Part shown: positions 8,222-30,432 of the stretch, piece after piece | How the letters are laid out: each line of letters starts with the position of its first letter | Numbering within the stretch: the stretch's first letter is position 1 | Origin: Setoptus koraiensis | Lineage: Eukaryota > Animalia > Arthropoda | Length of the DNA stretch: 64,000 bases | Direction of reading: 5' to 3' | NCBI GenBank assembly: GCA_048013815.1 | Contig: CM106585.1 | Span: 2,542,001 to 2,606,000, forward strand | Notes under the pieces: generated by a model | What the model saw: the letters and a program-made list of their open reading frames with translations, nothing else | The model's database searches: none | Told to the model about the DNA's origin: nothing | Position numbers and translations under genes: made by a program

Positions 8222-11200
8222 ATGCTGCATGGCGCGCTTTTGCTCGAGAATGGATCCGTCTACTTTGGACAACTGTTTGGTTGCACCAGCAAACAAGTTT
8301 CCGGTGAGGTCGTCTTCCAAACAGGCATGGTGGGCTACTGTGAATCATTGTCGGATCCGTCATACAACAAGCAAATATTAGTGCTGACATATCCACTCAT
8401 TGGCAATTATGGCGTACCAGACGAAAATGAGCGTGACGAACATGGTATACAGAAGAACTTCGAGTCGCACAAAATATGGGCCCAAGCGTTAGTTTGTTCA
8501 GAATTGTCAAGCCACTACAGTCATTGGAGTGCCAAATGTTCTCTAAACGAGTGGATGGTCAAGCATGACACTGTCGGAATTCAAGGAATCGACACCAGGC
8601 GCCTAACGAAAGAACTGACAACAAATGGAACAATATTGGGAAAAATCATCAATTTAGGCTCGCAATTTGATGCTGGCCAATTGTTCAATGTGAAACTCTT
8701 GCATCAATTGAGTGAGTCACAAGCGAAAGACATCGATGCTAAAGCCCATCAAGTAGATTGGCTCGATCCAAGCACCATGAATCTTGTGGAGCAAGTTTCC
8801 ACAAAACAAACTAGACTTTACAATGCGGAAAAATTCCCTCGCATTATGCTCATTGATTGCGGTGCTAAGAATAATATCGTTAGATGTTTGCTACAAGAAA
8901 AATTCAATGTCCAAGTCCAAGTGGTTCCCTGGGATTATGACATTGTGGCAAACGTTGGCGAATTTGACGGTCTCATGATCTCAAATGGCCCTGGCGACCC
9001 GATTAAATGTGAGCTACTCGTTGAGCGCTTGAGGAAACTCTTGCAAGACGACAGCTTCTTCAAGCCTGTTTTTGGTATTTGTTTAGGCCATCAACTCATG
9101 GGTCTGGCGGCGGGATTCACAACTTATAAAATGAACTTTGGTAACAGAGGCCACAATCAACCATGCAGACTTGTTGGGTCTCAGAGATGCTTGATAACAT
9201 CGCAAAATCATGGTTATGCATTGTCAAATCATTCGCCAAGTGACATACCCGACGGATGGACAGAGCTATTCGTCAATGCTAACGACAAATCGAATGAGGG
9301 CATTGCACACGTTAGCAAACCGTTCTTTTCTACTCAATTCCATCCCGAACACAATGCTGGACCAGATGATAGTGAATTTTTGTTCGACATATTCATAGAG
9401 TCAGTTCTACATTCCATCGAAGGCTCAAACGGGTTTCCCGTTTCTCAGATTATAGGCGAGCATCTGAGCAAGAACGCATCGGCCATTCCAACAAATATCA
9501 AAAAGGTTCTAATATTAGGCTCAGGAGGTCTTTCTATTGGTCAAGCTGGCGAATTCGACTATTCTGGCTCTCAAGCAATAAAGGCTTTGAGAAGTGAGAA
9601 AATCTTCACCATATTGATCAATCCTAACATTGCAACTGTTCAAACGTCACCATCTCTGGCGGATAGAGTTTATCTCTTGCCAGTGAATAGTCATTATGTG
9701 GAGAAAGTGATAAAAAATGAGCGACCAGATGGATTGATGCTCATGTTTGGGGGTCAAACAGCACTGAATTGTGGTATTGAGCTTGCGAGAACAGGAGTAC
9801 TCGATAGATACAATGTCAAAGTTTTGGGGCCACCTATAGATTCCATAATCAACTCTGAAGATAGAAAGTTATTTGCTGAAAAAGTTGCAGAGGTAGGTGG
9901 CCAGGTAGCTCCTAGTAGTGCTGTTAGCTCAGTAAGTGATGCGATACATGCCGCGCAAACTAAATTGGGTTATCCTGTTCTTGTGAGAGCGGCTTATGCT
10001 CTCGGTGGACTAGGCTCGGGTTTTGCCGCAAACAAAGCCGAGTTGGCAACACTTGTCAGTCAGGCTTTGATTTACTCGCCTCAAGTACTGTTGGACAAAA
10101 GCCTCAAAGGATGGAAAGAAGTGGAATATGAAGTGGTTCGAGACGTCTACGACAACTGTGCCACCATTTGTAACATGGAGAATGTCGATCCATTAGGTAT
10201 TCACACTGGCGAATCAATTGTTGTGGCTCCCAGCCAGACTTTGAACGATTCAGATTACAATACGCTCAGATCTATGGCCATAAAAATAGTTCGCCATTTG
10301 GGCGTTATAGGAGAGTGCAACATACAATATGCATTGAATCCACAGACAAATGATTTTTACATCATTGAGGTAAATCCCAGACTCTCTAGAAGTTCCGCGT
10401 TGGCTAGTAAAGCCACCGGCTATCCATTGGCATATATTGCTGCTAAGTTGGCCCTTGGAAAGTCTTTGGTAGATCTAGAAAACTCCGTGACTGGGACCAG
10501 TGCTTGCTTTGAGCCAAGCCTAGATTACTGCGTTGTCAAGATGCCCAGATGGGATCTTGGTAAATTTGCCGGAGTCACTCACGAAATCGGTAGCTCGATG
10601 AAGAGTATTGGCGAAGTTATGTCCATAGGTAGAAACTTCGAGGAGGCATTCCAAAAGGCGCTTAGGATGGTTGACGAAAATGTTACTGGATTTGATACAG
10701 ATGTGAAACCGGTCAATGAGAATGAACTGAGGTCTCCCACCGATAAACGCATATTTGTGCTGGCGGCAGCACTAAAAGAAGGCTACGAAATTGGCAGTTT
10801 ACATGAGATTACATCAATGAATACATGGTTTCTTGCGAAAATGAAGAATATAGTGGATTTTCAAAATACCCTTGCCAAATTCAAATCTTCTGATTCAAAC
10901 CTGAACTCTCTCGAGTTCAAAGAGTATCTTCTTCAAGCTAAGAAATTTGGTTTCTCCGATAAACAGATAGGAAATCTAATTGAAAGGACAGAATTGATAG
11001 TTCGTAAGGCGCGTTGCGACCATCATAAGCTTACGCCTTTTGTTAAGCGAGTTGACACAGTCTCTGCAGAATGGCCTGCCAAGACAAACTATCTATATCT
11101 CACCTACAATGGAGATGAGCACGATGTGGAGTTTTGTAATGAAACTCCATCTACTTCGGCGCATAACTCTCCTGTAAAAAGACTAGCTAAAACCGCAGAA

Positions 11201-14200
11201 ACTCCATCAACTGCACCTGAGCCGATGTTGTGTGATAGCCAACAGGTGATGGTCTTGGGCTCTGGTGTGTACAGAATCGGAAGTTCGGTCGAATTCGATT
11301 GTTGTGCCGTCGGTTGCGTCGAAGAACTTCGACGTCTCGATAAGAAAGTTATCATGCTCAATTATAATCCCGAAACTGTTAGTACTGACTTTGATGTTTG
11401 TGACAAACTATACTTTGATGAGATTAGCTTCGAAATAGTTATGGATGTTTACAAATTAGAAAATCCGATGGGTATAGTGATCTCTATGGGTGGCCAACTT
11501 CCAAACAATATAGCAATGGAATTACACAGACAACAAGCCATAATATTAGGAACATCTCCTGATAATATAGATAATGCAGAGAACAGGTTTAAATTTAGCC
11601 GCTTGCTCGACACGTATAATATTGGTCAGCCTGTTTGGAGGGAACTGGTGGACTTGGAAGCCGCCTTCAAGTTTTGCAACCAAGTAAAATATCCATGCAT
11701 TGTTCGGCCATCTTACGTACTCAGTGGCGCAGCCATGAATGTTGCCTACTCGGATAAAGATTTGGAGAAGTACTTGAGTCAAGCTTCAGCTGTATCCAAG
11801 GAGCATCCGGTTGTAATTTCCAAATTTTTAACAGATGCCAAAGAGATAGACATCGACGCCGTTGCTCAGCACGGAGAGTTAATTTGTATGGCAGTTTCAG
11901 AGCATATAGAAAATGCCGGAGTGCATTCGGGCGATGCCACGCTCGTCACACCTCCTCAGGACCTCAACGTTGAGACCATGGCACAGATTCGTCAAATATG
12001 TGGGCAAATTGCAATGGCACTGGAGGTTAATGGGCCATTCAATTTACAATTGATAGCGAAAGACAACCAGTTGAAAGTGATTGAATGTAACTTGAGAGCA
12101 TCAAGATCATTTCCTTTTGTCTCAAAGACGCTCAATTACGATTTTATCGCTATTGCCACAAAAGTTATCATGGGAGAGGAGGTGAAGCCAATTGATGTGA
12201 CATTCGGTCAACTACAGCCCAGTTCAAACTACACGGAGAAGGCTTCTAGAACTAATCGTGTCGGTGTTAAAGTACCTCAATTTTCATTCAGTAGACTCAG
12301 CGGTGCTGACATAAAGTTAGGCGTTGAGATGGCCAGCACAGGTGAAGTAGCCTGTTTTGGTGACAACCGTTATGCCGCATACCTCAAGGCCATGATAAGT
12401 ACGGGTTTCCGGATACCCGAACGAAAAGTTGTTTTACTTTCTATTGGAAGTTACAGACAAAAGGAGGAATTTCTACCGAGTGTCATAACACTGGCCAAAA
12501 TGGGCTACAAAATATATGCCACTCAAGGGACGGCCGACTACTACAACATCAAGTTGACCGAACTGCTTAAAGAAAGGGGCATAGATTTCAAATTGGAATT
12601 CATTGACTGGCCCTTTGGAGATGTCGGAGTTAACTTGACCACTCACGATGAAATAGATGCAATTGCTGCATATCTGTCAGCCAAGGAATTTGATTTGGTG
12701 ATAAATTTACCAATGCAAAGCGCTGGAGCGAGAAGAGTATCCACTCTTGGGTACAGAACGAGAAGGTTCGCTGTAGACCATGCTGTCCCGTTGATATCAG
12801 ACATCAAGTGCGCCAAGTTGCTCATTGAGGCCCTCACCCTTTATGATGGTCCACCGGATGTATCCGACTTGGACTGTTTGACCGCGAGCAAAATAATAAC
12901 ATTACCCGGTCTAATAGACGTTCATGTGCATGTCAGGGAACCCGGAGCTACTCACAAAGAAGATTTCGATACGGCCACCTCAGCAGCCATCGCTGGGGGC
13001 GTCACTATAATCGGCGCCATGCCAAATACTACGCCGCCAATCACCGATTTGGACACATTGAGATTAGAGCAACAATTGGCCCAATCGAAAGCTAGATGCG
13101 ACTACGGTCTCATTTTGGGTGCAACACCCACAAATGCAGCGTCTGTTGCAAGCCTCGCTCAGACGGAACCCGTCATGGCCTTAAAAATGTATCTCAACAA
13201 CACATTTGGAACGCTTTGTATGTCATCCATGGTCGATTGGCAGCAGCATTTCCTCAATTGGCCCAGCAACATTCCTATTTGTGTTCATGCGGAAGGACAA
13301 ACCGCTGCCGCGGCTATACTATTTGCTCAATTTTATAACAAACACGTACACATATGTCACGTAGCTAGAGAAGAAGAAATCCTTTTAATTAAGCATGCCA
13401 AATCGATGAACCTGCCCATCACCTGCGAAGTAGCACCTCATCATCTGGTGCTGTCCGATGATGACTTGACCACTCTAAATCTCGGAGATAAACTTGGCGC
13501 TGTTAAACCACCTTTGATGCCTAAAAAAGATCAAGACGCTCTATGGGATAATCTGGATATTATAGATTGCTTTGCTACGGATCATGCACCTCATTTGTTG
13601 AGTGAAAAAACGAGCGATAAAGTGCCACCTGGTTTTCCAGGTTTGGAAACTATGTTGCCGCTTCTACTAACTTATACACAGTCAACGGACCCCAAGAGGC
13701 AATTAACACTGCAACAAATTATTGAAAAGCTGTACACAAATCCTAAAAGGATTTTCAAAATACCAGATCAGCCAGATACATACGTTGAGGTTGATATGAG
13801 CAGACAGTGGTACATCGATGACCAAACTCATACTTATTCAAAATCTAAATGGACTCCATTTAAAGGGATGAAGGCAACAGGTAAAGTTAGTAAGGTTGTC
13901 ATCAGAGGGGAGGTCGCTTTTGTCGATGACAAACTGATTGTTCAACCTGGTTTCGGTCAAGACATTATGACCGACAGGCAGCAAATCAATTCATCTATTA
14001 GAAATAATATGCTCACGCCGACAACGTTCGGCTTGTTGAACACCCTTGACACAACATTCAGAGGCCGTTCCGATAGTTGCGTATCAACATCGAATGTGCA
14101 ACAACCTCAACAGTTACAGCAATTACCACAACCCCAGCAAATGCAACAACTTCAACAGCAATTACAGTTGCCTCAACAACTTCAACAACAATTGCAACTG

Positions 14201-15283
14201 CCTCAGCAGCTTCAACAACAATTACAGTTGCCTCAGCAACTTCAACAATTGCAAATACCTCAGCAGCCTGTCATTGTGACTCCTCAACCTGACACTGCTA
14301 TCAACACGATCGCTGCTATGCCAACTAGCTGGCCAATCAAGAGCTTCATCAAAACCCCCTGGACCACAAAGGCTGTGCTTCGTGTTGAGATGTTCGAGCA
14401 TGATGGCTTACATAATCTTTTCACCCTAGCCGAGCAGTATATGAAAGAGGTCAAAAACCACCGTGCCATCAAACCAGTGATGGCTGGAAAGATTATGGCC
14501 TCAATATTTTACGAGGCGAGCACTAGGACCCAATGCTCTTTTGCAAGTGCTATGTTGCGCTTGGGTGGTCAAGTCATCAATGTCAACGAATCATTTTCAT
14601 CGGCCAAGAAAGGCGAAAGTCTGGAGGATACCATACAGGTTATGAGCGGCTATTGTGACTTGATAGTTTTGAGACACCCGGAACCCGGGGCTGTCGACAG
14701 AGCTGCCACAGTTTGTCGCAATAAGCCTGTCATAAACGCTGGCGATGGGGTAGGCGAACATCCAACTCAGGCCTTGTTGGATATTTTCACTATAAGAAAA
14801 GAAATCGGTACAATCAAGAATTTAGTAATCGCGTTAGTGGGTGATCTCAAGAACAGTCGCACAGTTCATTCGTTAGCTAAATTGCTGACCAATTATGAAA
14901 TGGCCGAGCTGAGATTTATTTCTCCGCCAGGTTTAGAAATGCCGGATGAGATTTGTACCTATTTGAGCGATAGAAAAGTCAAATACACTAAATACTCAAA
15001 TTTCGATGAAATAATACCTGATACGGATGTCATATATATGACACGTATTCAAAAGGAGCGTTTCGATAACATTGAAGAGTATCGAAAATGTTGTGGCTTG
15101 CTCAGGATAACTCCACAAATAATGACCAAAGCCAAAAAGAAAATGATTGTCATGCACCCGCTGCCTAGAGTGGACGAGATTAGCCCCGACTTTGATAATG
15201 ACAATCGCGCAGCCTATTTCCGTCAATCAGAGTACGGAATGTATGTTCGTATGGCACTTATAGATATGGTGATGCGAAGATAA
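8222..15283 (+). CDS. CAD: CAD trifunctional protein (GATase/CPSase, dihydroorotase, aspartate transcarbamylase), 2353 aa, intronless
   Basis: GATase PVFGICLGHQL and QFHPEH; CPSase GPPIDSI..EDRKLF and IEVNPRLSRSSALASKATGYP; DHOase DVHVHVREPG and ATDHAPH; ATCase FYEASTRT, HPTQALLD and HPLPR. Confidence 0.98.
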   Translation: MLHGALLLENGSVYFGQLFGCTSKQVSGEVVFQTGMVGYCESLSDPSYNKQILVLTYPLIGNYGVPDENERDEHGIQKNFESHKIWAQALVCSELSSHYSHWSAKCSLNEWMVKHDTVGIQGIDTRRLTKELTTNGTILGKIINLGSQFDAGQLFNVKLLHQLSESQAKDIDAKAHQVDWLDPSTMNLVEQVSTKQTRLYNAEKFPRIMLIDCGAKNNIVRCLLQEKFNVQVQVVPWDYDIVANVGEFDGLMISNGPGDPIKCELLVERLRKLLQDDSFFKPVFGICLGHQLMGLAAGFTTYKMNFGNRGHNQPCRLVGSQRCLITSQNHGYALSNHSPSDIPDGWTELFVNANDKSNEGIAHVSKPFFSTQFHPEHNAGPDDSEFLFDIFIESVLHSIEGSNGFPVSQIIGEHLSKNASAIPTNIKKVLILGSGGLSIGQAGEFDYSGSQAIKALRSEKIFTILINPNIATVQTSPSLADRVYLLPVNSHYVEKVIKNERPDGLMLMFGGQTALNCGIELARTGVLDRYNVKVLGPPIDSIINSEDRKLFAEKVAEVGGQVAPSSAVSSVSDAIHAAQTKLGYPVLVRAAYALGGLGSGFAANKAELATLVSQALIYSPQVLLDKSLKGWKEVEYEVVRDVYDNCATICNMENVDPLGIHTGESIVVAPSQTLNDSDYNTLRSMAIKIVRHLGVIGECNIQYALNPQTNDFYIIEVNPRLSRSSALASKATGYPLAYIAAKLALGKSLVDLENSVTGTSACFEPSLDYCVVKMPRWDLGKFAGVTHEIGSSMKSIGEVMSIGRNFEEAFQKALRMVDENVTGFDTDVKPVNENELRSPTDKRIFVLAAALKEGYEIGSLHEITSMNTWFLAKMKNIVDFQNTLAKFKSSDSNLNSLEFKEYLLQAKKFGFSDKQIGNLIERTELIVRKARCDHHKLTPFVKRVDTVSAEWPAKTNYLYLTYNGDEHDVEFCNETPSTSAHNSPVKRLAKTAETPSTAPEPMLCDSQQVMVLGSGVYRIGSSVEFDCCAVGCVEELRRLDKKVIMLNYNPETVSTDFDVCDKLYFDEISFEIVMDVYKLENPMGIVISMGGQLPNNIAMELHRQQAIILGTSPDNIDNAENRFKFSRLLDTYNIGQPVWRELVDLEAAFKFCNQVKYPCIVRPSYVLSGAAMNVAYSDKDLEKYLSQASAVSKEHPVVISKFLTDAKEIDIDAVAQHGELICMAVSEHIENAGVHSGDATLVTPPQDLNVETMAQIRQICGQIAMALEVNGPFNLQLIAKDNQLKVIECNLRASRSFPFVSKTLNYDFIAIATKVIMGEEVKPIDVTFGQLQPSSNYTEKASRTNRVGVKVPQFSFSRLSGADIKLGVEMASTGEVACFGDNRYAAYLKAMISTGFRIPERKVVLLSIGSYRQKEEFLPSVITLAKMGYKIYATQGTADYYNIKLTELLKERGIDFKLEFIDWPFGDVGVNLTTHDEIDAIAAYLSAKEFDLVINLPMQSAGARRVSTLGYRTRRFAVDHAVPLISDIKCAKLLIEALTLYDGPPDVSDLDCLTASKIITLPGLIDVHVHVREPGATHKEDFDTATSAAIAGGVTIIGAMPNTTPPITDLDTLRLEQQLAQSKARCDYGLILGATPTNAASVASLAQTEPVMALKMYLNNTFGTLCMSSMVDWQQHFLNWPSNIPICVHAEGQTAAAAILFAQFYNKHVHICHVAREEEILLIKHAKSMNLPITCEVAPHHLVLSDDDLTTLNLGDKLGAVKPPLMPKKDQDALWDNLDIIDCFATDHAPHLLSEKTSDKVPPGFPGLETMLPLLLTYTQSTDPKRQLTLQQIIEKLYTNPKRIFKIPDQPDTYVEVDMSRQWYIDDQTHTYSKSKWTPFKGMKATGKVSKVVIRGEVAFVDDKLIVQPGFGQDIMTDRQQINSSIRNNMLTPTTFGLLNTLDTTFRGRSDSCVSTSNVQQPQQLQQLPQPQQMQQLQQQLQLPQQLQQQLQLPQQLQQQLQLPQQLQQLQIPQQPVIVTPQPDTAINTIAAMPTSWPIKSFIKTPWTTKAVLRVEMFEHDGLHNLFTLAEQYMKEVKNHRAIKPVMAGKIMASIFYEASTRTQCSFASAMLRLGGQVINVNESFSSAKKGESLEDTIQVMSGYCDLIVLRHPEPGAVDRAATVCRNKPVINAGDGVGEHPTQALLDIFTIRKEIGTIKNLVIALVGDLKNSRTVHSLAKLLTNYEMAELRFISPPGLEMPDEICTYLSDRKVKYTKYSNFDEIIPDTDVIYMTRIQKERFDNIEEYRKCCGLLRITPQIMTKAKKKMIVMHPLPRVDEISPDFDNDNRAAYFRQSEYGMYVRMALIDMVMRR
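14098..14270 (+). repeat. Coding Gln/Leu/Pro tandem repeat (LQQQLQLPQQ units, 30 nt) in the CAD DHOase-ATCase linker
   Basis: Translation PQQLQQLPQPQQMQQLQQQLQLPQQLQQQLQLPQQLQQQLQLPQQLQQLQIPQQP. Confidence 0.9.
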
Positions 15284-23811: not shown

Positions 23812-23968
23812 AGTCTATTCTCGGGATATTCAAATGTTTCAAAGACGGTGAATAAAACTATCAATAATAGTAGTGATACAGATTTTAAAAAAATGCGCCG
23901 TTTTCTTTTGGATAAAAAAATCGCAAATCAGGTCTTCCTATTGTAATACCTAAAGATTGTTTTGTTCG

Positions 23969-25999
23969 ATGGAAGATTTTCAGGACTTTGAAGATTTAAT
24001 ACGTCGTGTAGAAGCCGACGATAGCCAGGTTCTCCAGGAGAACCTTAAGGGGGATAGATGCCAGGAATGTGATGGACAGCTGATTGAGCGTGATGGGTTG
24101 TATTATTGTGACACGTGCCAAGTACAAGCTCAAGACGTCAAATACACTGTGGAGGCAGAGTGTAATTTCGATGAAGACGGAAACTTCATACAGACTCAGA
24201 GAATTGCTCAAGAAAAAACTGATCCTAAATCCTTGGTTGATTATGGATCTGCTTGGACAACAAGTCAGGCTTTCAGTCTCATCTTGAGGGAACAAGTCGA
24301 AACACTAAAACGTAACCGAGATCGCATCTTGGTCTCACCGAAATATTATGTCCAAGTACAGGAACTATGGTCCACCTATTTCAGAAGATTTCTCATGAAT
24401 CCAGAAATGCCTCGGGAAAGAGACCTGAGTATCATGAAAGGATGCACGAAAGTTGATATACCATCAAGATCTAAACGAATTTCAAATAAGCCATTAGGCT
24501 ATCGTTTTGGACACCATAGTTTAAGTAGGCCGAGATCAAATCCTGATAATGAAGATAGAGATATGATTGTGTCGATTTTCGAACCAATTACGGAGCTTAT
24601 AATTGATGAAGAACAATCAAAGATAGAAATAATTGATGAGGAACAATTGAAGGAAGAAATAATTGATGAGGAACAATTGAAGGAAGAAATGATTCATGAG
24701 GAACAGTTGAAGGAAGAAATAATTGATGATGAACAATCGGAGGTAAAAAATACACACATGACATTAGGTAAAACATTAGGTTTTCTCGAAGCTATAGCCA
24801 GGCTTAGGTGCAATCTTATATTTGCATCAGATTTGGCCCGATGGGCTGATCAAGGAGTTTTGCCATATCATGATAGCGTGTCTTACTTTCCTGCCGATTG
24901 GAAATTGAATTATAAAGACCGTTTAATGTTTTCGCAGACAGTTTCTCCGAAACCTACCTTTATAACTAGAATAGCATCAAATCTCCTCAATGACCTATGT
25001 GATTCTTTCCAGTTATCGATACCCGATCCAAAAGATATCCTAAGAAGGATGCTCATAGACATGAATATGCCTTGCACTGATCATGGTCTAGTTGATCTAG
25101 TTCTTGACACGGTCTCGTTTGACGATCTCAAGATGAAATTGTCCGTTACACTTGGATCAAAGAAAAAGAGAGTCCAAACTATACCACAGTATGATCGTTG
25201 GGCCGCGGCAATGATTATAATAACATTGAAAAAACATTTTGTCTTTGATAGCTTATATGAAAATTGCATAAGTTCTCTTGCAAACAGTCACAATGAAGAA
25301 AACTTTACAAATACGTTTGTTTTCAAAGACTGGTTTGAACAGAGCTATGCCAGATTTAGACTTATCGAGCAATATGATGTAGGACATTACAATCAGAATC
25401 GTGAAAAGATGGAATCATCAACTTTTTGTCGATTTTTTGCCTCCGAAGCTAACAAGTGGTTCAACGCAGCAACAACTAGAACGCCAGGCATTTACAGGTC
25501 AAAAAACGATGTCAATCGACAACGCGATCTCAAGCATTTCTTGATGTCTGCAATACCTTTGCCAGTAGACAAAAACGTAACTCATGTGTGGGAGAGACCA
25601 AATCCTTCTCTAACTCCTCTCACCGATGCTTACAATCGCGTCAGGGACACGGCCAAGAAAATATTCCCAGATGTAAATTTGGATAGAGATTTTAAGAAAA
25701 CCACTATGAATTTTTACACTCATAATGAGAAAAAGAATGATTTTTGTGCTATACGAGATGAACGACAATGGTCGTTGGGTATACAACGCAAAAGCATCCC
25801 TGTCAGGACTGCAGAAGATTGGCCTGTTACATTCAAGCATCTACTTCACATTTCCGGTTATTTGTGTTACTGTGATCCTCAAGAAATTCTACGCGAGTTG
25901 CTAATAGTAGAAAGGGTAGTGGCCTCCAAGACACTCACCAGATTTAGGAGAGGAAGAGTTAAAAATTTTTGTATGAATAAAGCATCTTTTCGTTCTTAA
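23969..25999 (+). CDS. TAF1B: RNA polymerase I SL1 subunit TAF1B/Rrn7, intronless
   Basis: N-terminal zinc ribbon RCQECDG...DGLYYCDTC, WTTSQAFSLILREQV, then TLGFL...ASDLARWADQGVLPY, typical of TAF1B/RRN7. First ATG is at 23969 (the track's 23957 start is TTG). Confidence 0.8.
   Translation: MEDFQDFEDLIRRVEADDSQVLQENLKGDRCQECDGQLIERDGLYYCDTCQVQAQDVKYTVEAECNFDEDGNFIQTQRIAQEKTDPKSLVDYGSAWTTSQAFSLILREQVETLKRNRDRILVSPKYYVQVQELWSTYFRRFLMNPEMPRERDLSIMKGCTKVDIPSRSKRISNKPLGYRFGHHSLSRPRSNPDNEDRDMIVSIFEPITELIIDEEQSKIEIIDEEQLKEEIIDEEQLKEEMIHEEQLKEEIIDDEQSEVKNTHMTLGKTLGFLEAIARLRCNLIFASDLARWADQGVLPYHDSVSYFPADWKLNYKDRLMFSQTVSPKPTFITRIASNLLNDLCDSFQLSIPDPKDILRRMLIDMNMPCTDHGLVDLVLDTVSFDDLKMKLSVTLGSKKKRVQTIPQYDRWAAAMIIITLKKHFVFDSLYENCISSLANSHNEENFTNTFVFKDWFEQSYARFRLIEQYDVGHYNQNREKMESSTFCRFFASEANKWFNAATTRTPGIYRSKNDVNRQRDLKHFLMSAIPLPVDKNVTHVWERPNPSLTPLTDAYNRVRDTAKKIFPDVNLDRDFKKTTMNFYTHNEKKNDFCAIRDERQWSLGIQRKSIPVRTAEDWPVTFKHLLHISGYLCYCDPQEILRELLIVERVVASKTLTRFRRGRVKNFCMNKASFRS
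24601..24750 (+). repeat. Five-unit 30-bp coding minisatellite (EEIIDEEQLK) in TAF1B
   Basis: aattgatgaggaacaattgaaggaagaaat repeated with exact 30-nt period. Confidence 0.92.
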
Positions 26000-26156
26000 T
26001 ATATCCGATCAATGAGCACAACGTAGTGTAAAACTTCTTTAATAAATAACCAAAAATACAGGTAAATTATCTTTTCAAATATTGTTTCTTGAGTGCGAAC
26101 TTTTTAATATGTCCGATCAAAGATTGGGGCTATGTTACAATGTTGGCCATCTGAGC

Positions 26157-28289
26157 TTACCACTCTTCGTCCACGGCTGCTACGGCATCATTTGTAACAC
26201 TAGCTGAGGTTTCATTGCCCCACCCGCCGTCTGCCTCTCCGTTTGTTTCTCCGTTTGTTGGCTGCATGTCGCTAGAGGATGCAAAAAAGTCTGGTATCTC
26301 TTGATTGGCCTCCTTCAACAGAGGAATGAGTTCTTCCAATATTTCTGTATCTTTGTCCTGATCATAAAAACTAACAGCTTTTCCCGGGTGGCCTGCTCTA
26401 CCTGTTCGGCCTATCCTGTGGACATATTCGTCGATATTGTTTGGTAAATCATAGTTTATAACTAGATATACTTTGGGTAGATCGAGGCCACGATTTCCTA
26501 CTGGGCTCGATATTAAAAATCTCCTTTCGCCTCTCTTGAATTGAAGTATAGCTTCTTCCCTTTGTTGTTGATGACGATCTCCATGTATACTGGTGGCACT
26601 TAAGTTTAGGGCAGTGAAGAAACCAGCGAGCATATCGGCTGCGGCTTTTGTTTGTGTGAAAATTATCGTTTTTTGATCTTCTGGCACTTGAGCCAAAATT
26701 TTTTTGAGCTCTCTTTTCTTTTCTGCCCGTGTCACTTTTATAAACTCTTGGGTTATGTTACTGTTGGCCGAACCGACTCTTCCAACGGTGATGAAGGCAA
26801 ATTTGTTCCCTATCAATTCTCTTGCTACCCTTTGTGTTTCAGGTTTGAATGTTGCACTAAAGAAGAGGATTTGCCTCTGATCTTGAGGAGGCATACTCTC
26901 GTGAGCGAGAATTTCTCTGATATCGTTGATGAAACCATCGTCTATGAGACGGTCTCCTTCATCCAATATGATAAACTTGATATTCTTGAATCCAATCCAA
27001 TTTCTAGCTACAAAATCTTTGAGCCTTCCTGGTGTGGATACAAGCACGTTGCAACCTCTACTGATTTGAGCTTTCAAGTGACCTGTTGATATGCCGCCAT
27101 ATATGACGTGACATTTGACAACTGTATCTCTTGACCACTTTAAGGTTTCGTTGTGTAGTTGCCTTGCTAGTTCACGGGTTGGTGCTATGATTAGGCATGA
27201 TGGCTCCTGAGTTTCCTGATCAGCATTATTCGGCAGATTTGAGTTTTTCGAATCATTCAACAAGGTCTGGATGACAGGAACTGTAAATGCAGCGGTTTTT
27301 CCTGAACCAGTTTGGGCACAACCAATAATGTTGAGTCCATCCAGCAGAGCTGGCATTGCCCACTTCTGGATTGGGGTCATCTTTTTGTAGTTTGCTTTCT
27401 CCAGGTGACTTAGCAGCAACTCACTTGAGATCACATCTTTGAATGCGTTTATGGGTTTGACTATTCCAGGTGGCACACAAGTGACAATCTGATCACAATA
27501 ATGATCAAAATGGACTCCCTCTTCGACTGCAGTAAGTTTGGCCTCCTCATCAAGATCTATCTCCTCAGGTCTGTATGGTGCGGGTCTATCTTCGTCGGGC
27601 TTATCCCTGGGTTTAGATGATTCTTCCCGGCCGTCAGCGCCTGTGGCTCCCCATCCGCCATCGCCTGTGGCTCCCCATCCGCCGCTATCTTTGTCGGGCT
27701 TATCCCTGGGTTTGGATGATCCTCCCCATGCGTCACCGCCTGAGGCTCCCCATCCGCCGCTATCTTTGTCGGGCTTATCCCTGGGTTTAGATGATCCTCC
27801 CCATCCATCACCGCCTGAGGCTCCCCATCCGCCGCTATCTTTGTCGGGCTTATCCCTGGGTTTAGACGATCCTCCCCGACCGTCAGCGCCTGTGGCTCCC
27901 CATCCGTCATCACCTGTGGCTCCCCACCCGCCGCTATCTTTTTGGGGCTTATCTCTGGGTTTAGATGATCCTCCCCATCCATCACCGCCTGAGGCTCCCC
28001 ATCCGCCGCTATCTTTTTGGGGCTTATCCCTGGGTTTAAATGATCCTCCTCGGCCGTTAGCGCCTGTAGCTCCCCATCCGTCATCACCTGTGGCTCCCCA
28101 TCCGCCGCTATCTTTTTGGGGCTTATCTCTGGGTTTAGATGATCCGCCCCATGTGTCACCGCCTGTGGCTCCCCATCCGCCGCTATCTTTTTGGGGCTTA
28201 TCATTGGGTTTAGATGATTCTCCCCATTCGTCACCGCCTGAGGTTCCCCATCCGTCATCGTCTAGTTTTTGTTTCTTGTAGGAGCTCAT
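26157..28289 (-). CDS. vas: Vasa/DDX4-like DEAD-box RNA helicase, intronless (alternative in-frame ATG at 28370)
   Basis: Q motif MTPIQKWAMP, AQTGSGKT, PTRELA, TPGRL, DEGD, SAT, HGDRHQQQRE, HRIGRTGRAG, plus the acidic C-terminus ending in Trp (VDEEW) characteristic of Vasa. Confidence 0.88.
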   Translation of the reverse strand: MSSYKKQKLDDDGWGTSGGDEWGESSKPNDKPQKDSGGWGATGGDTWGGSSKPRDKPQKDSGGWGATGDDGWGATGANGRGGSFKPRDKPQKDSGGWGASGGDGWGGSSKPRDKPQKDSGGWGATGDDGWGATGADGRGGSSKPRDKPDKDSGGWGASGGDGWGGSSKPRDKPDKDSGGWGASGGDAWGGSSKPRDKPDKDSGGWGATGDGGWGATGADGREESSKPRDKPDEDRPAPYRPEEIDLDEEAKLTAVEEGVHFDHYCDQIVTCVPPGIVKPINAFKDVISSELLLSHLEKANYKKMTPIQKWAMPALLDGLNIIGCAQTGSGKTAAFTVPVIQTLLNDSKNSNLPNNADQETQEPSCLIIAPTRELARQLHNETLKWSRDTVVKCHVIYGGISTGHLKAQISRGCNVLVSTPGRLKDFVARNWIGFKNIKFIILDEGDRLIDDGFINDIREILAHESMPPQDQRQILFFSATFKPETQRVARELIGNKFAFITVGRVGSANSNITQEFIKVTRAEKKRELKKILAQVPEDQKTIIFTQTKAAADMLAGFFTALNLSATSIHGDRHQQQREEAILQFKRGERRFLISSPVGNRGLDLPKVYLVINYDLPNNIDEYVHRIGRTGRAGHPGKAVSFYDQDKDTEILEELIPLLKEANQEIPDFFASSSDMQPTNGETNGEADGGWGNETSASVTNDAVAAVDEEW
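27590..28260 (-). repeat. Coding tandem array of 25-aa and 33-aa GW-rich units in the Vasa N-terminus
   Basis: Seven units of S(S/F)KP(R/N)DKP(Q/D)KDSGGWGA...WG..., alternating 75-nt and 99-nt variants. Confidence 0.95.
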
Positions 28290-28943
28290 TGTAGCATTGA
28301 AATGTTGAAAATTAGTTACTACTGATATCACGTGTGTAACAATCGCCTCAGCAAATGAAGAGCGTTTCATTCCAAACGCGCATTTGAACTAAAGGGTGTG
28401 AGGACCAATACAACAAGTTTCTACAGATGAAGCCACACTGCCTTCCACAGTTCATTTTCTGCACACAAACACAGAGCGCCGCTTGAGATTTTTCCAATAT
28501 ACACCGATATTTTAGGAAAGATCCACCAGAGGCGCTGCTCAGATATCGCTCATCACAGAATGGAGCGCAGCGCTGCCCTCGCGGAGTTTTCTCAAACTAT
28601 TGTCGGTGCATCAGAAAAACCTTACTCACACTGTGCTTATGTATATCGCACAGCTCGTACATGAATAGGTTTTTGAGCAAGCTTAGCGCCATAATACAAC
28701 ATGGGCACACAATACTACTTTGCGCTCTCTGTGCACCTGTGCTGCGCACGTGATTTTGTACTTACACCGCTTGCTCCTCACACCCTATAAAACACACTGT
28801 TCAAATTCTAGCACATGGTGCTTTTGTCAATTATCGAAAAATGGAGCACTGCTGAAGGTAGCCGTAGCCTTTTTAGTACTAATGCGCGTTTGGAACGAGA
28901 CACTCTCTAGAGCCGAAAGGGTTATACAATCGCTAACATGGAT

Positions 28944-29327: not shown

Positions 29328-29448
29328 GCCGAGTAATATCAAACCATTTCTTATCATTTCTATATATATGTTTATTTATATATATTTATATTTATATATA
29401 TATATATATTCACATATATATCCACATTTAATCACATCAAATAAATAA

Positions 29449-30432
29449 ATGGCTGAGCAAGACAAATTAAATATTGACTCTATCATCGCTAGATTGTTAG
29501 AGGTAAGAGGTTCTAGACCCGGTAAGAATGTTCAATTAAGCGACCAAGAAATCAGGAGCTTGTGCGTCAAGTCTAGAGAAATATTCCTCAGTCAACCAAT
29601 ACTGCTAGAACTTGAGGCCCCTCTCAAAATATGTGGCGACATTCATGGTCAATATTATGATTTACTACGCTTGTTCGAATATGGAGGCTTCCCACCAGAA
29701 TCAAATTATCTCTTCTTGGGTGACTATGTGGACCGAGGAAAACAATCCCTTGAGACGATTTGCTTATTGTTAGCTTATAAGATTAAATACCCAGAAAACT
29801 TCTTTCTATTACGTGGCAACCATGAATGTGCTAGTATAAATCGTATCTATGGATTTTATGACGAATGTAAAAGACGTTACAACATCAAATTGTGGAAAAC
29901 ATTTACAGATTGTTTCAATTGCTTACCTGTGGCTGCTATTGTCGACGAAAAAATCTTCTGTTGTCATGGTGGTTTGAGCCCGGATCTGACTTCTATGGAA
30001 CAAATACGTCGCCTTATGCGCCCTACAGACGTTCCGGATACTGGTCTACTCTGCGATCTATTGTGGTCTGACCCAGATAAAGACGTCCACGGATGGGGCG
30101 AAAACGACCGAGGTGTCTCATTCACTTTTGGTGCCGATATCGTTGGTAAATTTCTGAGTCGTCACGACCTTGATCTTATTTGTAGAGCTCATCAAGTAGT
30201 GGAAGACGGTTATGAATTCTTTGCCAAACGTCAGTTAGTTACTCTATTTTCCGCTCCAAACTACTGCGGTGAGTTCGATAATGCCGGTGGAATGATGAGC
30301 GTAGATGAAACTTTGATGTGTTCGTTTCAAATCCTCAAGCCTTCAGAGAAGAAAACAAAGTATCAATACAGCGGCCTTAACTCTACTAGGCCAGTGACAC
30401 CACCAAGAGGCCCCATCAAAAAGAAACAATAG
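29449..30432 (+). CDS. PP1: Serine/threonine protein phosphatase 1 catalytic subunit, intronless
   Basis: GDIHGQ, GDYVDRG, RGNHE, HGGLSP, RAHQ, SAPNYC and C-terminal RPVTPPR. Confidence 0.98.

What the first reader, a model, noticed from the sequence alone, without database searches (positions are those of the whole stretch)
27590..28289. Vasa N-terminus is a tandem GW/WG array: candidate Argonaute-hook helicase
Seen: about 215 aa upstream of the helicase core consist of seven tandem units (25-aa SSKPRDKPxKDSGGWGAxGGDxWGG and a 33-aa variant) plus a leader, giving 16 Trp, each in a WG and mostly GWG context, in G/S/D-rich disordered sequence. There are only two RGG motifs and no CCHC knuckles. 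Known: typical Vasa N-termini use RG/RGG (Tudor-binding after Arg methylation), FG repeats or CCHC knuckles, whereas reiterated GW/WG in such a context is the Argonaute-binding platform of GW182/TNRC6, Tas3 and plant NRPE1/SPT5L. Inference: this Vasa may have swapped Tudor/PIWI-mediated recruitment for direct multivalent binding to AGO-clade proteins, a rewired germline small-RNA system. This would be especially plausible if the lineage has a reduced piRNA pathway, as reported for some mites. Best candidate for a novel system in this window.
Basis: partly seen in the sequence, partly recalled or inferred. Interest (0 to 1): 0.8.

Follow-up and report, generated by a model that had tools for sequence, protein, structure and literature searches.

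The report
Vasa helicase with Trp-Gly repeat tail
A gall-mite copy of the germline RNA helicase Vasa carries a disordered front end with 16 tryptophan-glycine motifs. This looks like Vasa's own small terminal tryptophan motif multiplied, and whether it grips Argonaute proteins remains untested.

Summary
An intronless minus-strand ORF (26157-28289, 710 aa) encodes a Vasa/DDX4-clade DEAD-box helicase. Its first 233 residues are a leader, seven tandem units of 25 or 33 aa and a partial eighth. They hold 16 Trp, all W-G and 13 G-W-G, two RGG and no CCHC knuckle. AlphaFold2 gives pLDDT below 50 and no secondary structure for this stretch.

The gene sits in an eriophyoid-specific Vasa clade that has duplicated. 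All 16 proteins of paralogue A (which includes this gene) carry W-G-rich tails, N- or C-terminal, built from unrelated repeat units. Paralogue B has short tails, of FG/RGG type in the two read.

The W-G motif is not foreign to Vasa. Most animal Vasa proteins start with an acidic-Trp motif and end with one, and other acariform Vasa proteins have DDWG motifs flanking their knuckles. So the array is best read as an amplified Vasa signature motif forming a multivalent disordered tail.

Direct AGO binding fits the composition and most Trp spacings but was not testable. Published work reports a piRNA toolkit in an eriophyoid, which weakens the premise of a reduced piRNA pathway. No RNA evidence could be obtained. 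Earlier scan notes report a second vasa gene and other WG-array proteins in this genome; I did not check them.

The parts
26157..28289 (-). Intronless coding sequence of the Vasa paralogue A (710 aa plus stop). An in-frame ATG 81 nt upstream (28368-28370) would add 27 residues that have no counterpart in relatives.
   Evidence: ORF list and translation. Relatives start M-S-x-W-G-like. There is no Met between residues 1 and 304.
28218..28289 (-). Leader, residues 1-24. It holds the first two motifs (DDDGWG, GDEWG) and resembles the acidic-Trp start found in most Vasa proteins.
27621..28217 (-). Seven tandem units, residues 25-223, of 25 or 33 aa. Each is a basic SSKPRDKPxKDS block followed by GGWGA(S/T)G(G/D)(D/G)xWG. 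The 33-aa units add an 8-aa sub-repeat ending in GRGG or GREE.
   Evidence: TRF and the unit table. The W and the following G are invariant in all 14 unit positions.
27561..27620 (-). Partial eighth unit (SSKPRDKPDED) fused to the conserved pre-helicase flank RPAPYRPEE, residues 224-243.
   Evidence: The flank is conserved in alignment A1.
26832..27377 (-). DEAD/DEAH-box helicase domain (first RecA-like domain), residues 305-486.
   Evidence: Pfam PF00270, E 1.2e-43. pLDDT about 90.
26952..26963 (-). Motif II reads D-E-G-D instead of D-E-A-D, residues 443-446.
   Evidence: All 50 eriophyoid relatives have DEGD and the 11 outgroup proteins checked have DEAD.
26391..26720 (-). Helicase C-terminal domain (second RecA-like domain), residues 524-633.
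   Evidence: Pfam PF00271, E 3.7e-33.
26160..26264 (-). Disordered C-terminal tail, residues 676-710, with one more GGWG and the Vasa-type acidic end DEEW.
   Evidence: The terminal acidic-Trp motif is described as Vasa-specific in PMC4400588 and bioRxiv 10.1101/663641.

Best explanation
The array is the lineage-specific form of Vasa's glycine-rich disordered tail. It was built by repeated tandem amplification of the acidic-Trp(-Gly) motif that Vasa proteins normally carry once at each end.

It most likely works as a multivalent tail. About 16 exposed Trp residues sit on flexible G/S/D spacers that alternate with short basic K/R-P blocks, and they make many weak contacts with each other and with other granule components. 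This would concentrate helicase paralogue A in germ granules (nuage), the role played by FG and RG/RGG tails in other Vasa proteins.

Shown here: the anatomy, predicted disorder, Vasa identity, presence of W-G tails in all 16 paralogue-A proteins retrieved despite complete turnover of the repeat units, and the ancestral origin of the motif.

Inferred: the sticker or docking function, the germ-granule location, and that the array is translated.
For: - Identity. The gene has DEAD and Helicase_C domains. Its best solved relatives are Bombyx Vasa (383 bits) and Drosophila Vasa (361), ahead of DDX3X (345). It is nested in acariform Vasa in the tree, with SH-aLRT 99 and 100. It ends in DEEW.
- Disorder. 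Residues 1-230 have pLDDT below 50 and no secondary structure, while the core is above 90.
- Trp enrichment. Trp is 5.4% of tail residues in paralogue A, 3.2% in paralogue B, 2.5% in other Acariformes and 1.45% in other animals. The context shifts from D/E-W-D to D/G-W-G-S/A/T.
- Sticker make-up. Trp is nearly the only aromatic or hydrophobic residue in these tails.
- Turnover. Repeat periods differ in every species: 58/25/33, 34, 16, 9, 48 and 30 aa. Independent young DNA arrays exist in two other lineages. The arrays lie at the N end, the C end or both.
- Ancestral seed. An acidic-Trp start occurs in 38 of 56 other animal Vasa proteins and an acidic-Trp end in 50 of 56 (PMC9735842).
- Function of the ancestral motif. 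Deleting the acidic C-terminal motif, or the W660E change, impairs Drosophila Vasa function (PMC4400588, PMC10378496).
- Paralogue B tails are mostly short. The two longer ones read (P0046, P0029) are of FG/RGG type.
- A full helicase cannot be made without translating the array, because there is no Met between residues 1 and 304.
Against: - There is no expression, localisation or binding data. Three RNA runs gave zero reads, which is no test.
- Lys outnumbers Arg (26 to 10 in residues 1-233) and there are only two RGG. To my knowledge Arg is the preferred cation-pi partner in the human DDX4 tail, so a DDX4-like Phe/Arg mechanism is not simply copied.
- The strict W-G and acidic context looks more like a short linear motif for a defined pocket than a generic sticker.
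- Differences within the array are too few to show selection (43 synonymous against 91 non-synonymous).
- Three of six frames are open across the repeat, so openness alone proves little.
Confidence: 0.45

Rival explanations
1. Argonaute hook. The W-G motifs insert into the tryptophan pockets on the PIWI domain of AGO-clade, or possibly PIWI-clade, proteins. One Vasa-A molecule would then dock several Argonautes next to the helicase.
For: - Reiterated WG/GW in a disordered, low-hydropathy, charged and hypervariable sequence is the published signature of Ago-binding platforms (PMC4615383, PMC2910046).
- Inter-unit Trp spacings of 17 and 25 meet the rule for TNRC6 sites of two Trp separated by ten or more residues (PMC9262622; spacings).
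- Conservation of the Trp only, with free turnover of the flanks and of the position, matches such platforms.
- Vasa is a core small-RNA pathway factor, and loss of its terminal Trp lowers piRNA function in flies (PMC10378496).
- Argonaute-binding GW proteins include a helicase, SDE3, and GW-repeat partners of a Tetrahymena Argonaute (cited in PMC12477606).
- Unchecked scan notes report GW182 and several Argonautes in this genome.
Against: - Nothing here tests binding.
- The N-terminal 233 residues match no Pfam family above chance and no solved chain.
- The intra-unit spacing of 8 is below the stated ten.
- Trp pockets are reported as conserved in metazoan AGO-clade proteins but variable in the PIWI clade, Vasa's usual partners (PMC12477606).
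- G/S-rich repeats with GW are known false positives of hook predictors (PMC2910046).
- The motif's strongly acidic left flank is the ancestral Vasa context rather than a borrowed hook.
- The piRNA toolkit is reported present in an eriophyoid (PMC7738191).
Confidence: 0.25
2. The array is a multiplied copy of the specific, still unidentified, ligand motif at Vasa's ends. It raises avidity for whatever protein normally reads the terminal acidic-Trp motif, which is neither Argonaute nor a condensate in general.
For: - The repeat motif (acidic, acidic/Gly, Trp, Gly) grades into the start motif MSDDW(D/G) and the end motif (D/E)(D/E)xW of ordinary Vasa proteins.
- That terminal motif is needed for most Vasa functions in flies, and the papers read here name no partner for it (PMC4400588, PMC10378496).
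- The arrays work at either terminus.
Against: The partner is unknown, so the idea is hard to separate from the best explanation. In the repeats Gly follows the Trp, whereas in most animals Asp does.
Confidence: 0.15
3. CCR4-NOT recruitment. The Trp motifs bind the tryptophan pockets of CNOT9/CNOT1, as the W-motifs of the GW182 silencing domain do. This would couple the helicase to deadenylation.
For: W-rich disordered regions of GW182 bind CCR4-NOT as well as AGO (PMC4615383). The motif context of small residues around Trp is similar.
Against: Nothing in the papers read here links Vasa to CCR4-NOT through its tails, and nothing here tests it.
Confidence: 0.05
4. The array is a tolerated, selectively neutral repeat expansion, or it is not part of the protein because of a downstream start or an unseen intron.
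For: The units are young, at 80-93% DNA identity. The substitution pattern within the array is near neutral. Several frames are open. No RNA evidence was obtained.
Against: - All 16 paralogue-A proteins retrieved keep W-G-rich tails although the units are unrelated.
- The genes in the other two loci examined are also single uninterrupted ORFs that include their arrays.
- There is no alternative Met before residue 304.
- The genes in this window are closely spaced, and most of those checked read as single uninterrupted ORFs.
Confidence: 0.1

Closest known systems
Vasa/DDX4 terminal acidic-tryptophan motif (Drosophila Vas residues 655-661, GLH-1 terminal Trp)
   Same: Same protein family and the same motif type: acidic residues followed by Trp, at the very start and the very end. 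This gene keeps both (DDDGWG near the start, DEEW at the end).
   Different: Normally there is one copy per end. Here there are 16 in a tandem array, with Gly rather than Asp after the Trp.
Glycine-rich FG repeats of C. elegans GLH-1/2/4 and the FG/RGG tail of human DDX4
   Same: A disordered, Gly-rich, aromatic-repeat N-terminal tail on a Vasa helicase, used for granule association or perinuclear tethering (bioRxiv 10.1101/663641; PMC10378496).
   Different: The aromatic residue is Trp rather than Phe. Lys exceeds Arg, and the motif has a fixed acidic left flank.
GW182/TNRC6 Argonaute-binding domain and plant NRPE1/SPT5L WG platforms
   Same: Reiterated WG/GW in hypervariable, disordered, low-hydropathy sequence. 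Only the Trp residues are conserved, and many Trp pairs are ten or more residues apart.
   Different: No sequence homology, a more acidic context, and attachment to a helicase core. Binding to Argonaute was not tested.
Arabidopsis SDE3 (UPF1-like RNA helicase with a C-terminal Ago hook)
   Same: An RNA helicase of a silencing pathway carrying GW motifs (cited in PMC12477606).
   Different: A different helicase superfamily and far fewer motifs. For SDE3 the AGO binding was shown experimentally.
Tetrahymena GW-repeat proteins that bind a Tetrahymena Argonaute (cited in PMC12477606; details below from my own recollection)
   Same: As I recall, one of them (CnjB) combines GW repeats with CCHC zinc knuckles and binds the PIWI-clade protein Twi1p. 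That architecture is seen in other acariform Vasa N-termini and in the clade-A protein P0004.
   Different: It has no helicase and is not related. The window's protein has lost the knuckles.

Membership tests
Vasa/DDX4 subfamily of DEAD-box helicases | Two RecA-like helicase domains with the DEAD-box motif set | tested here: met
   PF00270 at 1.2e-43 and PF00271 at 3.7e-33. Motifs I, Ia, III and VI are present. Motif II is D-E-G-D, a D-E-x-D variant shared by all 50 eriophyoid relatives. The core is modelled at pLDDT above 90.
Vasa/DDX4 subfamily of DEAD-box helicases | Phylogenetic placement with Vasa rather than DDX3/PL10/Belle | tested here: met
   The gene is nested in acariform Vasa (SH-aLRT 99) inside arthropod Vasa (99), with the tree rooted on a plant DEAD-box helicase that I take to be DDX3-like. 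Nearly all of the named hits among the best 120 are called vasa/DDX4/glh; a few echinoderm and cnidarian rows are labelled DED1-like, three of them on the same contigs as DDX4 isoforms. Solved Vasa structures outscore DDX3X by 16-38 bits. Caveat: no animal DDX3 sequence was in the tree, and the eriophyoid stem is long (0.72).
Vasa/DDX4 subfamily of DEAD-box helicases | Acidic residues followed by a terminal tryptophan | tested here: met
   The protein ends in VDEEW. The feature is defined in PMC4400588 and bioRxiv 10.1101/663641.
Vasa/DDX4 subfamily of DEAD-box helicases | Glycine-rich repeat region in front of the core | tested here: met
   64 Gly in 233 residues, tandem repeats, predicted disordered.
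Vasa/DDX4 subfamily of DEAD-box helicases | CCHC zinc knuckles (common but repeatedly lost, so not strictly defining) | tested here: not met
   No C-x2-C-x4-H-x4-C pattern and no PF00098 hit. Among the 16 clade-A proteins retrieved, only P0004 has CCHC knuckles.
Vasa/DDX4 subfamily of DEAD-box helicases | Germline or nuage expression | not testable with these tools
   The three RNA runs laid gave zero reads, so the organism is probably not in them.
Argonaute-binding GW/WG platform (Ago hook) | Reiterated WG/GW motifs in a disordered, low-hydropathy, hypervariable region | tested here: met
   16 W-G in 233 residues. Only 5 Ile/Leu/Val/Met occur in the two tails together (263 residues). pLDDT is below 50. 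The units are unrelated between species.
Argonaute-binding GW/WG platform (Ago hook) | At least two Trp separated by ten or more residues per binding site (PMC9262622) | tested here: met
   Spacings alternate 8 with 17 or 25. Inter-unit pairs qualify and intra-unit pairs do not.
Argonaute-binding GW/WG platform (Ago hook) | Trp-dependent binding to the PIWI-domain pockets of an Argonaute | not testable with these tools
   No complex prediction or binding assay was available, and no Argonaute sequence of this genome was within reach.
Argonaute-binding GW/WG platform (Ago hook) | Sequence relationship to a known hook (GW182 family) | tested here: not met
   Residues 1-233 gave no Pfam family except one sub-threshold chance hit, and no solved chain at E up to 10. 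The atlas gave no usable hit. Known hooks are not homologous to each other, so this bears on family membership and not on function.
Phase-separating FG/RGG tail of DDX4 type | Disordered tail with regularly spaced aromatic residues | tested here: met
   Trp occurs every 8, 17 or 25 residues, and Trp is the only frequent aromatic residue.
Phase-separating FG/RGG tail of DDX4 type | Abundant Arg (RG/RGG) as partner of the aromatic residues | tested here: not met
   Two RGG; 10 Arg against 26 Lys in residues 1-233.

The most novel reading that the evidence does not exclude
Vasa's long-known but unexplained terminal acidic-tryptophan motif is itself a ligand for the tryptophan pockets of Argonaute-family proteins. 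In eriophyoid mites, after a Vasa duplication, one paralogue amplified it into a true multivalent Ago hook that physically couples the helicase to several Argonautes. The other paralogue kept an ordinary short or FG/RGG-type tail.
Probability: 0.15. Interest if true: 0.8.

Novelty: new variant of a known kind. Interest (0 to 1): 0.5.

Why it matters
Vasa is the most widely used germline marker, yet the papers read here name no binding partner for its conserved terminal acidic-Trp motif.

A lineage where that motif has been multiplied 10 to 20 times, independently in every species examined and in only one of two paralogues, is a natural gain-of-valency experiment. The tail could serve as bait to find the motif's partner. 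It could also show whether Trp can replace the Phe/Arg grammar of germ-granule tails.

If the partner proves to be an Argonaute, that would link Vasa directly to the GW-pocket system. If not, the finding is an ordinary lineage-specific variation of a rapidly evolving disordered tail.

Tried and rejected
- **RNA evidence.** The one search for runs listed no holder on record as RNA. Three RNA runs listed only by species label gave zero reads on 26000-28600, so they are no test.
- **DNA contigs.** Short-read contigs agree with the sequence but break inside the array, so copy number could not be checked.
- **N-terminal 233 residues alone.** Pfam gave one sub-threshold chance hit, the solved-structure sequences gave nothing at E up to 10, and the protein atlas gave no usable hit.
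- **Selection within the array.** There were 43 synonymous and 91 non-synonymous differences among units. That is too few and too affected by concerted evolution to be informative.
- **Homology of the repeat unit to other mites.** The match to the W-G...K-P-K...D-S...W-G unit of a Tetranychus-related protein (P0076) was marginal at E 0.002. It was non-significant to Tetranychus urticae and Fragariocoptes. This is a resemblance of design, not shown homology.
- **Microsynteny.** The closest relative's locus has entirely different neighbours.
- **Genome-wide composition habit.** I considered and set aside the idea that W-G richness is general in this genome. No other ORF in the window shows it. 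However, unchecked scan notes list several other WG-array proteins elsewhere in the genome.
- **Not possible.** An inventory or pocket check of this genome's Argonautes was out of reach, because their sequences lie outside the window. An animal DDX3 outgroup for the tree was also unavailable.
Full report
**1. The observation**

The region lies in a single uninterrupted minus-strand ORF, 26157-28370. Counting from the ATG at 28289, it encodes 710 residues.

- Residues 1-24 are a leader with two W-G motifs.
- Residues 25-223 are seven tandem units of 25, 33, 25, 33, 25, 25 and 33 aa.
- Residues 224-243 are a partial eighth unit that merges into the conserved flank RPAPYRPEE.

Tandem Repeats Finder reports periods of 75, 99, 174 and 249 nt at 80-93% match. 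It also reports a 24-nt sub-repeat, which explains the 33-aa variant.

All 16 Trp of residues 1-233 are followed by Gly, and 13 are G-W-G. RGG occurs twice. There is no FG and no CCHC knuckle.

No other ORF in the window is W-G rich. Contigs of a public DNA run match with no differences but break inside the array, so the copy number is unconfirmed.

**2. What the gene is**

- Pfam finds DEAD (residues 305-486) and Helicase_C (524-633).
- In a search with residues 235-710, nearly all of the named hits among the best 120 are called vasa, DDX4 or glh. A few echinoderm and cnidarian rows are labelled DED1-like, three of them on the same contigs as DDX4 isoforms. The closest named hits are from the eriophyoid mites Aceria tosichella and Fragariocoptes setiger, at 58% identity. 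The best hit overall is 64%.
- Solved Bombyx and Drosophila Vasa structures score 383 and 361 bits, against 345 for DDX3X.
- The protein ends in DEEW, the acidic-plus-terminal-Trp motif described as Vasa-specific (PMC4400588; bioRxiv 10.1101/663641).

I built a maximum-likelihood tree of 83 helicase cores, rooted on a plant DEAD-box helicase that I take to be DDX3-like. All eriophyoid sequences form one clade (SH-aLRT 100, stem 0.72). That clade is nested in acariform Vasa (99), which is nested in arthropod Vasa (99).

The eriophyoid clade splits into two paralogues, and Fragariocoptes is present in both.

- Clade A has 16 rows, including the window, and support of 98.
- Clade B has 34 rows and support of 97.

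Caveats: no animal DDX3 sequence was in the tree, and the stem is long. An unchecked note of this scan (s1-330753) reports a second vasa gene next to actin, 2.9 Mb away. That fits the duplication.

**3. The tail in relatives**

All 16 clade-A proteins have W-rich tails, with 4 to 22 Trp each (3.7-8.2% of tail residues). The tails lie at the N end, the C end or both.

Over 206 tail Trp, the residue after the Trp is Gly in 79%, against 18.7% Gly in those tails overall. The residue before it is Gly (41%) or Asp (30%), and the two before that are mostly Asp. Trp is practically the only aromatic or hydrophobic residue.

The repeat units are unrelated between species, with periods of 58/25/33, 34, 16, 9, 48 and 30 aa. 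Two other loci carry their own young DNA arrays, of 102 nt and 48 nt, inside single-exon genes.

Some members combine W-G runs with other modules:
- four CCHC knuckles (P0004);
- four RanBP2-type zinc fingers (P0011);
- many RG/RGG (P0002, P0008, P0013).

Clade B has mostly short tails. The two longer ones I read (P0046, P0029) are of classical FG/RGG type.

**4. The motif is not foreign to Vasa**

- Of 56 non-acariform animal Vasa proteins in the set, 38 have a Trp in the first 16 residues, typically M-S-D-D-W-D. Fifty end with acidic residues and Trp. The literature notes this too (PMC9735842).
- Other acariform Vasa proteins (Leptotrombidium, Dinothrombium, Oppia, Tetranychus and unnamed relatives) carry several DDWG or GGWG motifs on both sides of their CCHC knuckles.
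- Tail Trp content rises stepwise: 1.45% in other animals, 2.5% in other Acariformes, 3.2% in clade B and 5.4% in clade A. The residue after Trp shifts from Asp to Gly along the same series.

The simplest history is amplification of Vasa's own terminal motif. In this protein, and in most clade-A relatives, it is accompanied by loss of the knuckles.

A small detail fits this picture. The Arg of the GRGG/GREE ends of the 33-aa units is encoded by CGG or CGA. CGG is one transition from the TGG of Trp in the neighbouring sub-repeats.

**5. Structure and translation**

AlphaFold2, run with a 26-row alignment, gives pLDDT below 50 and no secondary structure for residues 1-230 and 676-710. It gives about 90 for the core.

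There is no Met between residues 1 and 304, and residue 304 lies next to the Q motif. A complete helicase can therefore only be made by translating the array, unless an intron removes it. Three of six frames are open across the repeat, so openness alone is weak evidence.

No RNA evidence could be obtained. The only RNA runs offered were listed by species label and held no reads of this stretch.

**6. How it most likely works**

I commit to a multivalent disordered tail in which Trp is the contact residue. The Trp residues sit on G/S/D spacers that alternate with short basic blocks. The tail would concentrate paralogue A in germ granules, as FG and RG/RGG tails do in other Vasa proteins (bioRxiv 10.1101/663641; PMC10378496). 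I give this a confidence of 0.45.

The Argonaute-hook reading stays open at 0.25.
- For it: the composition, hypervariability and most spacings fit published criteria (PMC4615383, PMC2910046, PMC9262622).
- Against it: nothing tests binding; the intra-unit spacing is 8; G/S-rich repeats are known false positives; and Trp pockets are reported as variable in the PIWI clade (PMC12477606).

Published inventory of the eriophyoid Aculops lycopersici lists expanded PIWI/AGO3 plus Zucchini, Armitage, Maelstrom and SoYb. It found no AGO2, R2D2 or RdRP (PMC7738191). The premise of a reduced piRNA pathway is therefore weakened for this superfamily.

The other rivals are:
- an avidity array for the unknown reader of Vasa's terminal motif (0.15);
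- CCR4-NOT binding (0.05);
- a neutral or untranslated repeat (0.10).

Unchecked notes of the scan mention, in the same genome, a GW182 with a duplicated Argonaute-binding half, other acidic WG arrays, a stand-alone CCHC-plus-DDGWG protein and an Argonaute with its own WG repeats. If real, W-G tails may be a shared grammar of this mite's small-RNA proteins. That would suit both the condensate and the hook readings.

**7. Novelty and verdict**

In ten full-text searches I found no paper describing W-G arrays on Vasa.

The finding is a new variant of a known kind: a Vasa disordered tail built from Trp-Gly motifs, carried by every protein retrieved from one eriophyoid paralogue. It is not a new system. 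Its interest is moderate, and its main value is as a natural handle on the unexplained terminal Trp motif of Vasa.

Noticed in passing
window 26952-26963 (minus), and proteins P0001-P0049: Motif II reads D-E-G-D in all 50 eriophyoid Vasa-clade proteins of both paralogues, whereas all 11 outgroup Vasa proteins checked have D-E-A-D. Motif V is also altered: SPVG(N/E)RGLD against T(S/A)VAARGLD.
   Followed up: partly
proteins P0001-P0049 (tree): There is an eriophyoid-specific duplication of Vasa. Clade A has long W-G tails. Clade B has mostly short tails, and the two longer ones read (P0046, P0029) are of FG/RGG type. Fragariocoptes has one of each.
   Followed up: partly
protein P0011 (unnamed clade-A relative): This Vasa carries four RanBP2-type zinc fingers (PF00641, E 8.7e-31) in the place where other Vasa proteins have CCHC knuckles, flanked by GWG runs. 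I have not seen this domain combination described.
   Followed up: no
L001 8040-8339 and L002 750-978: The Vasa-A genes of two other eriophyoid lineages carry independent young coding tandem arrays, of 102 nt and 48 nt. Both genes are single-exon. The gene neighbours in L001 differ completely from the window's.
   Followed up: yes
window 27538-28281 (+) and 27557-28258 (-): Two further ORFs of 247 and 233 aa are open across the array in other frames. This is a by-product of a repeat unit without stop codons, not evidence of genes.
   Followed up: yes
window 28290-28370 (minus): An in-frame ATG 81 nt upstream would add 27 residues (MKRSSFAEAIV...) with no counterpart in relatives. The true start could not be settled without RNA data.
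   Followed up: partly
window 8222-15283 (+): The complete CAD gene (carbamoyl-phosphate synthase, dihydroorotase, aspartate transcarbamoylase; 2353 aa) is one uninterrupted ORF. It shows how few introns the genes in this window have.
   Followed up: no
window 23957-25999 (+): A 680-aa ORF immediately downstream of vasa, convergent with it, has no Pfam match at E up to 1e-5.
   Followed up: no
window 29370-29431 (+): A short TA/CATATA-type microsatellite lies just upstream of the PP1 catalytic-subunit gene (29449-30432).
   Followed up: no
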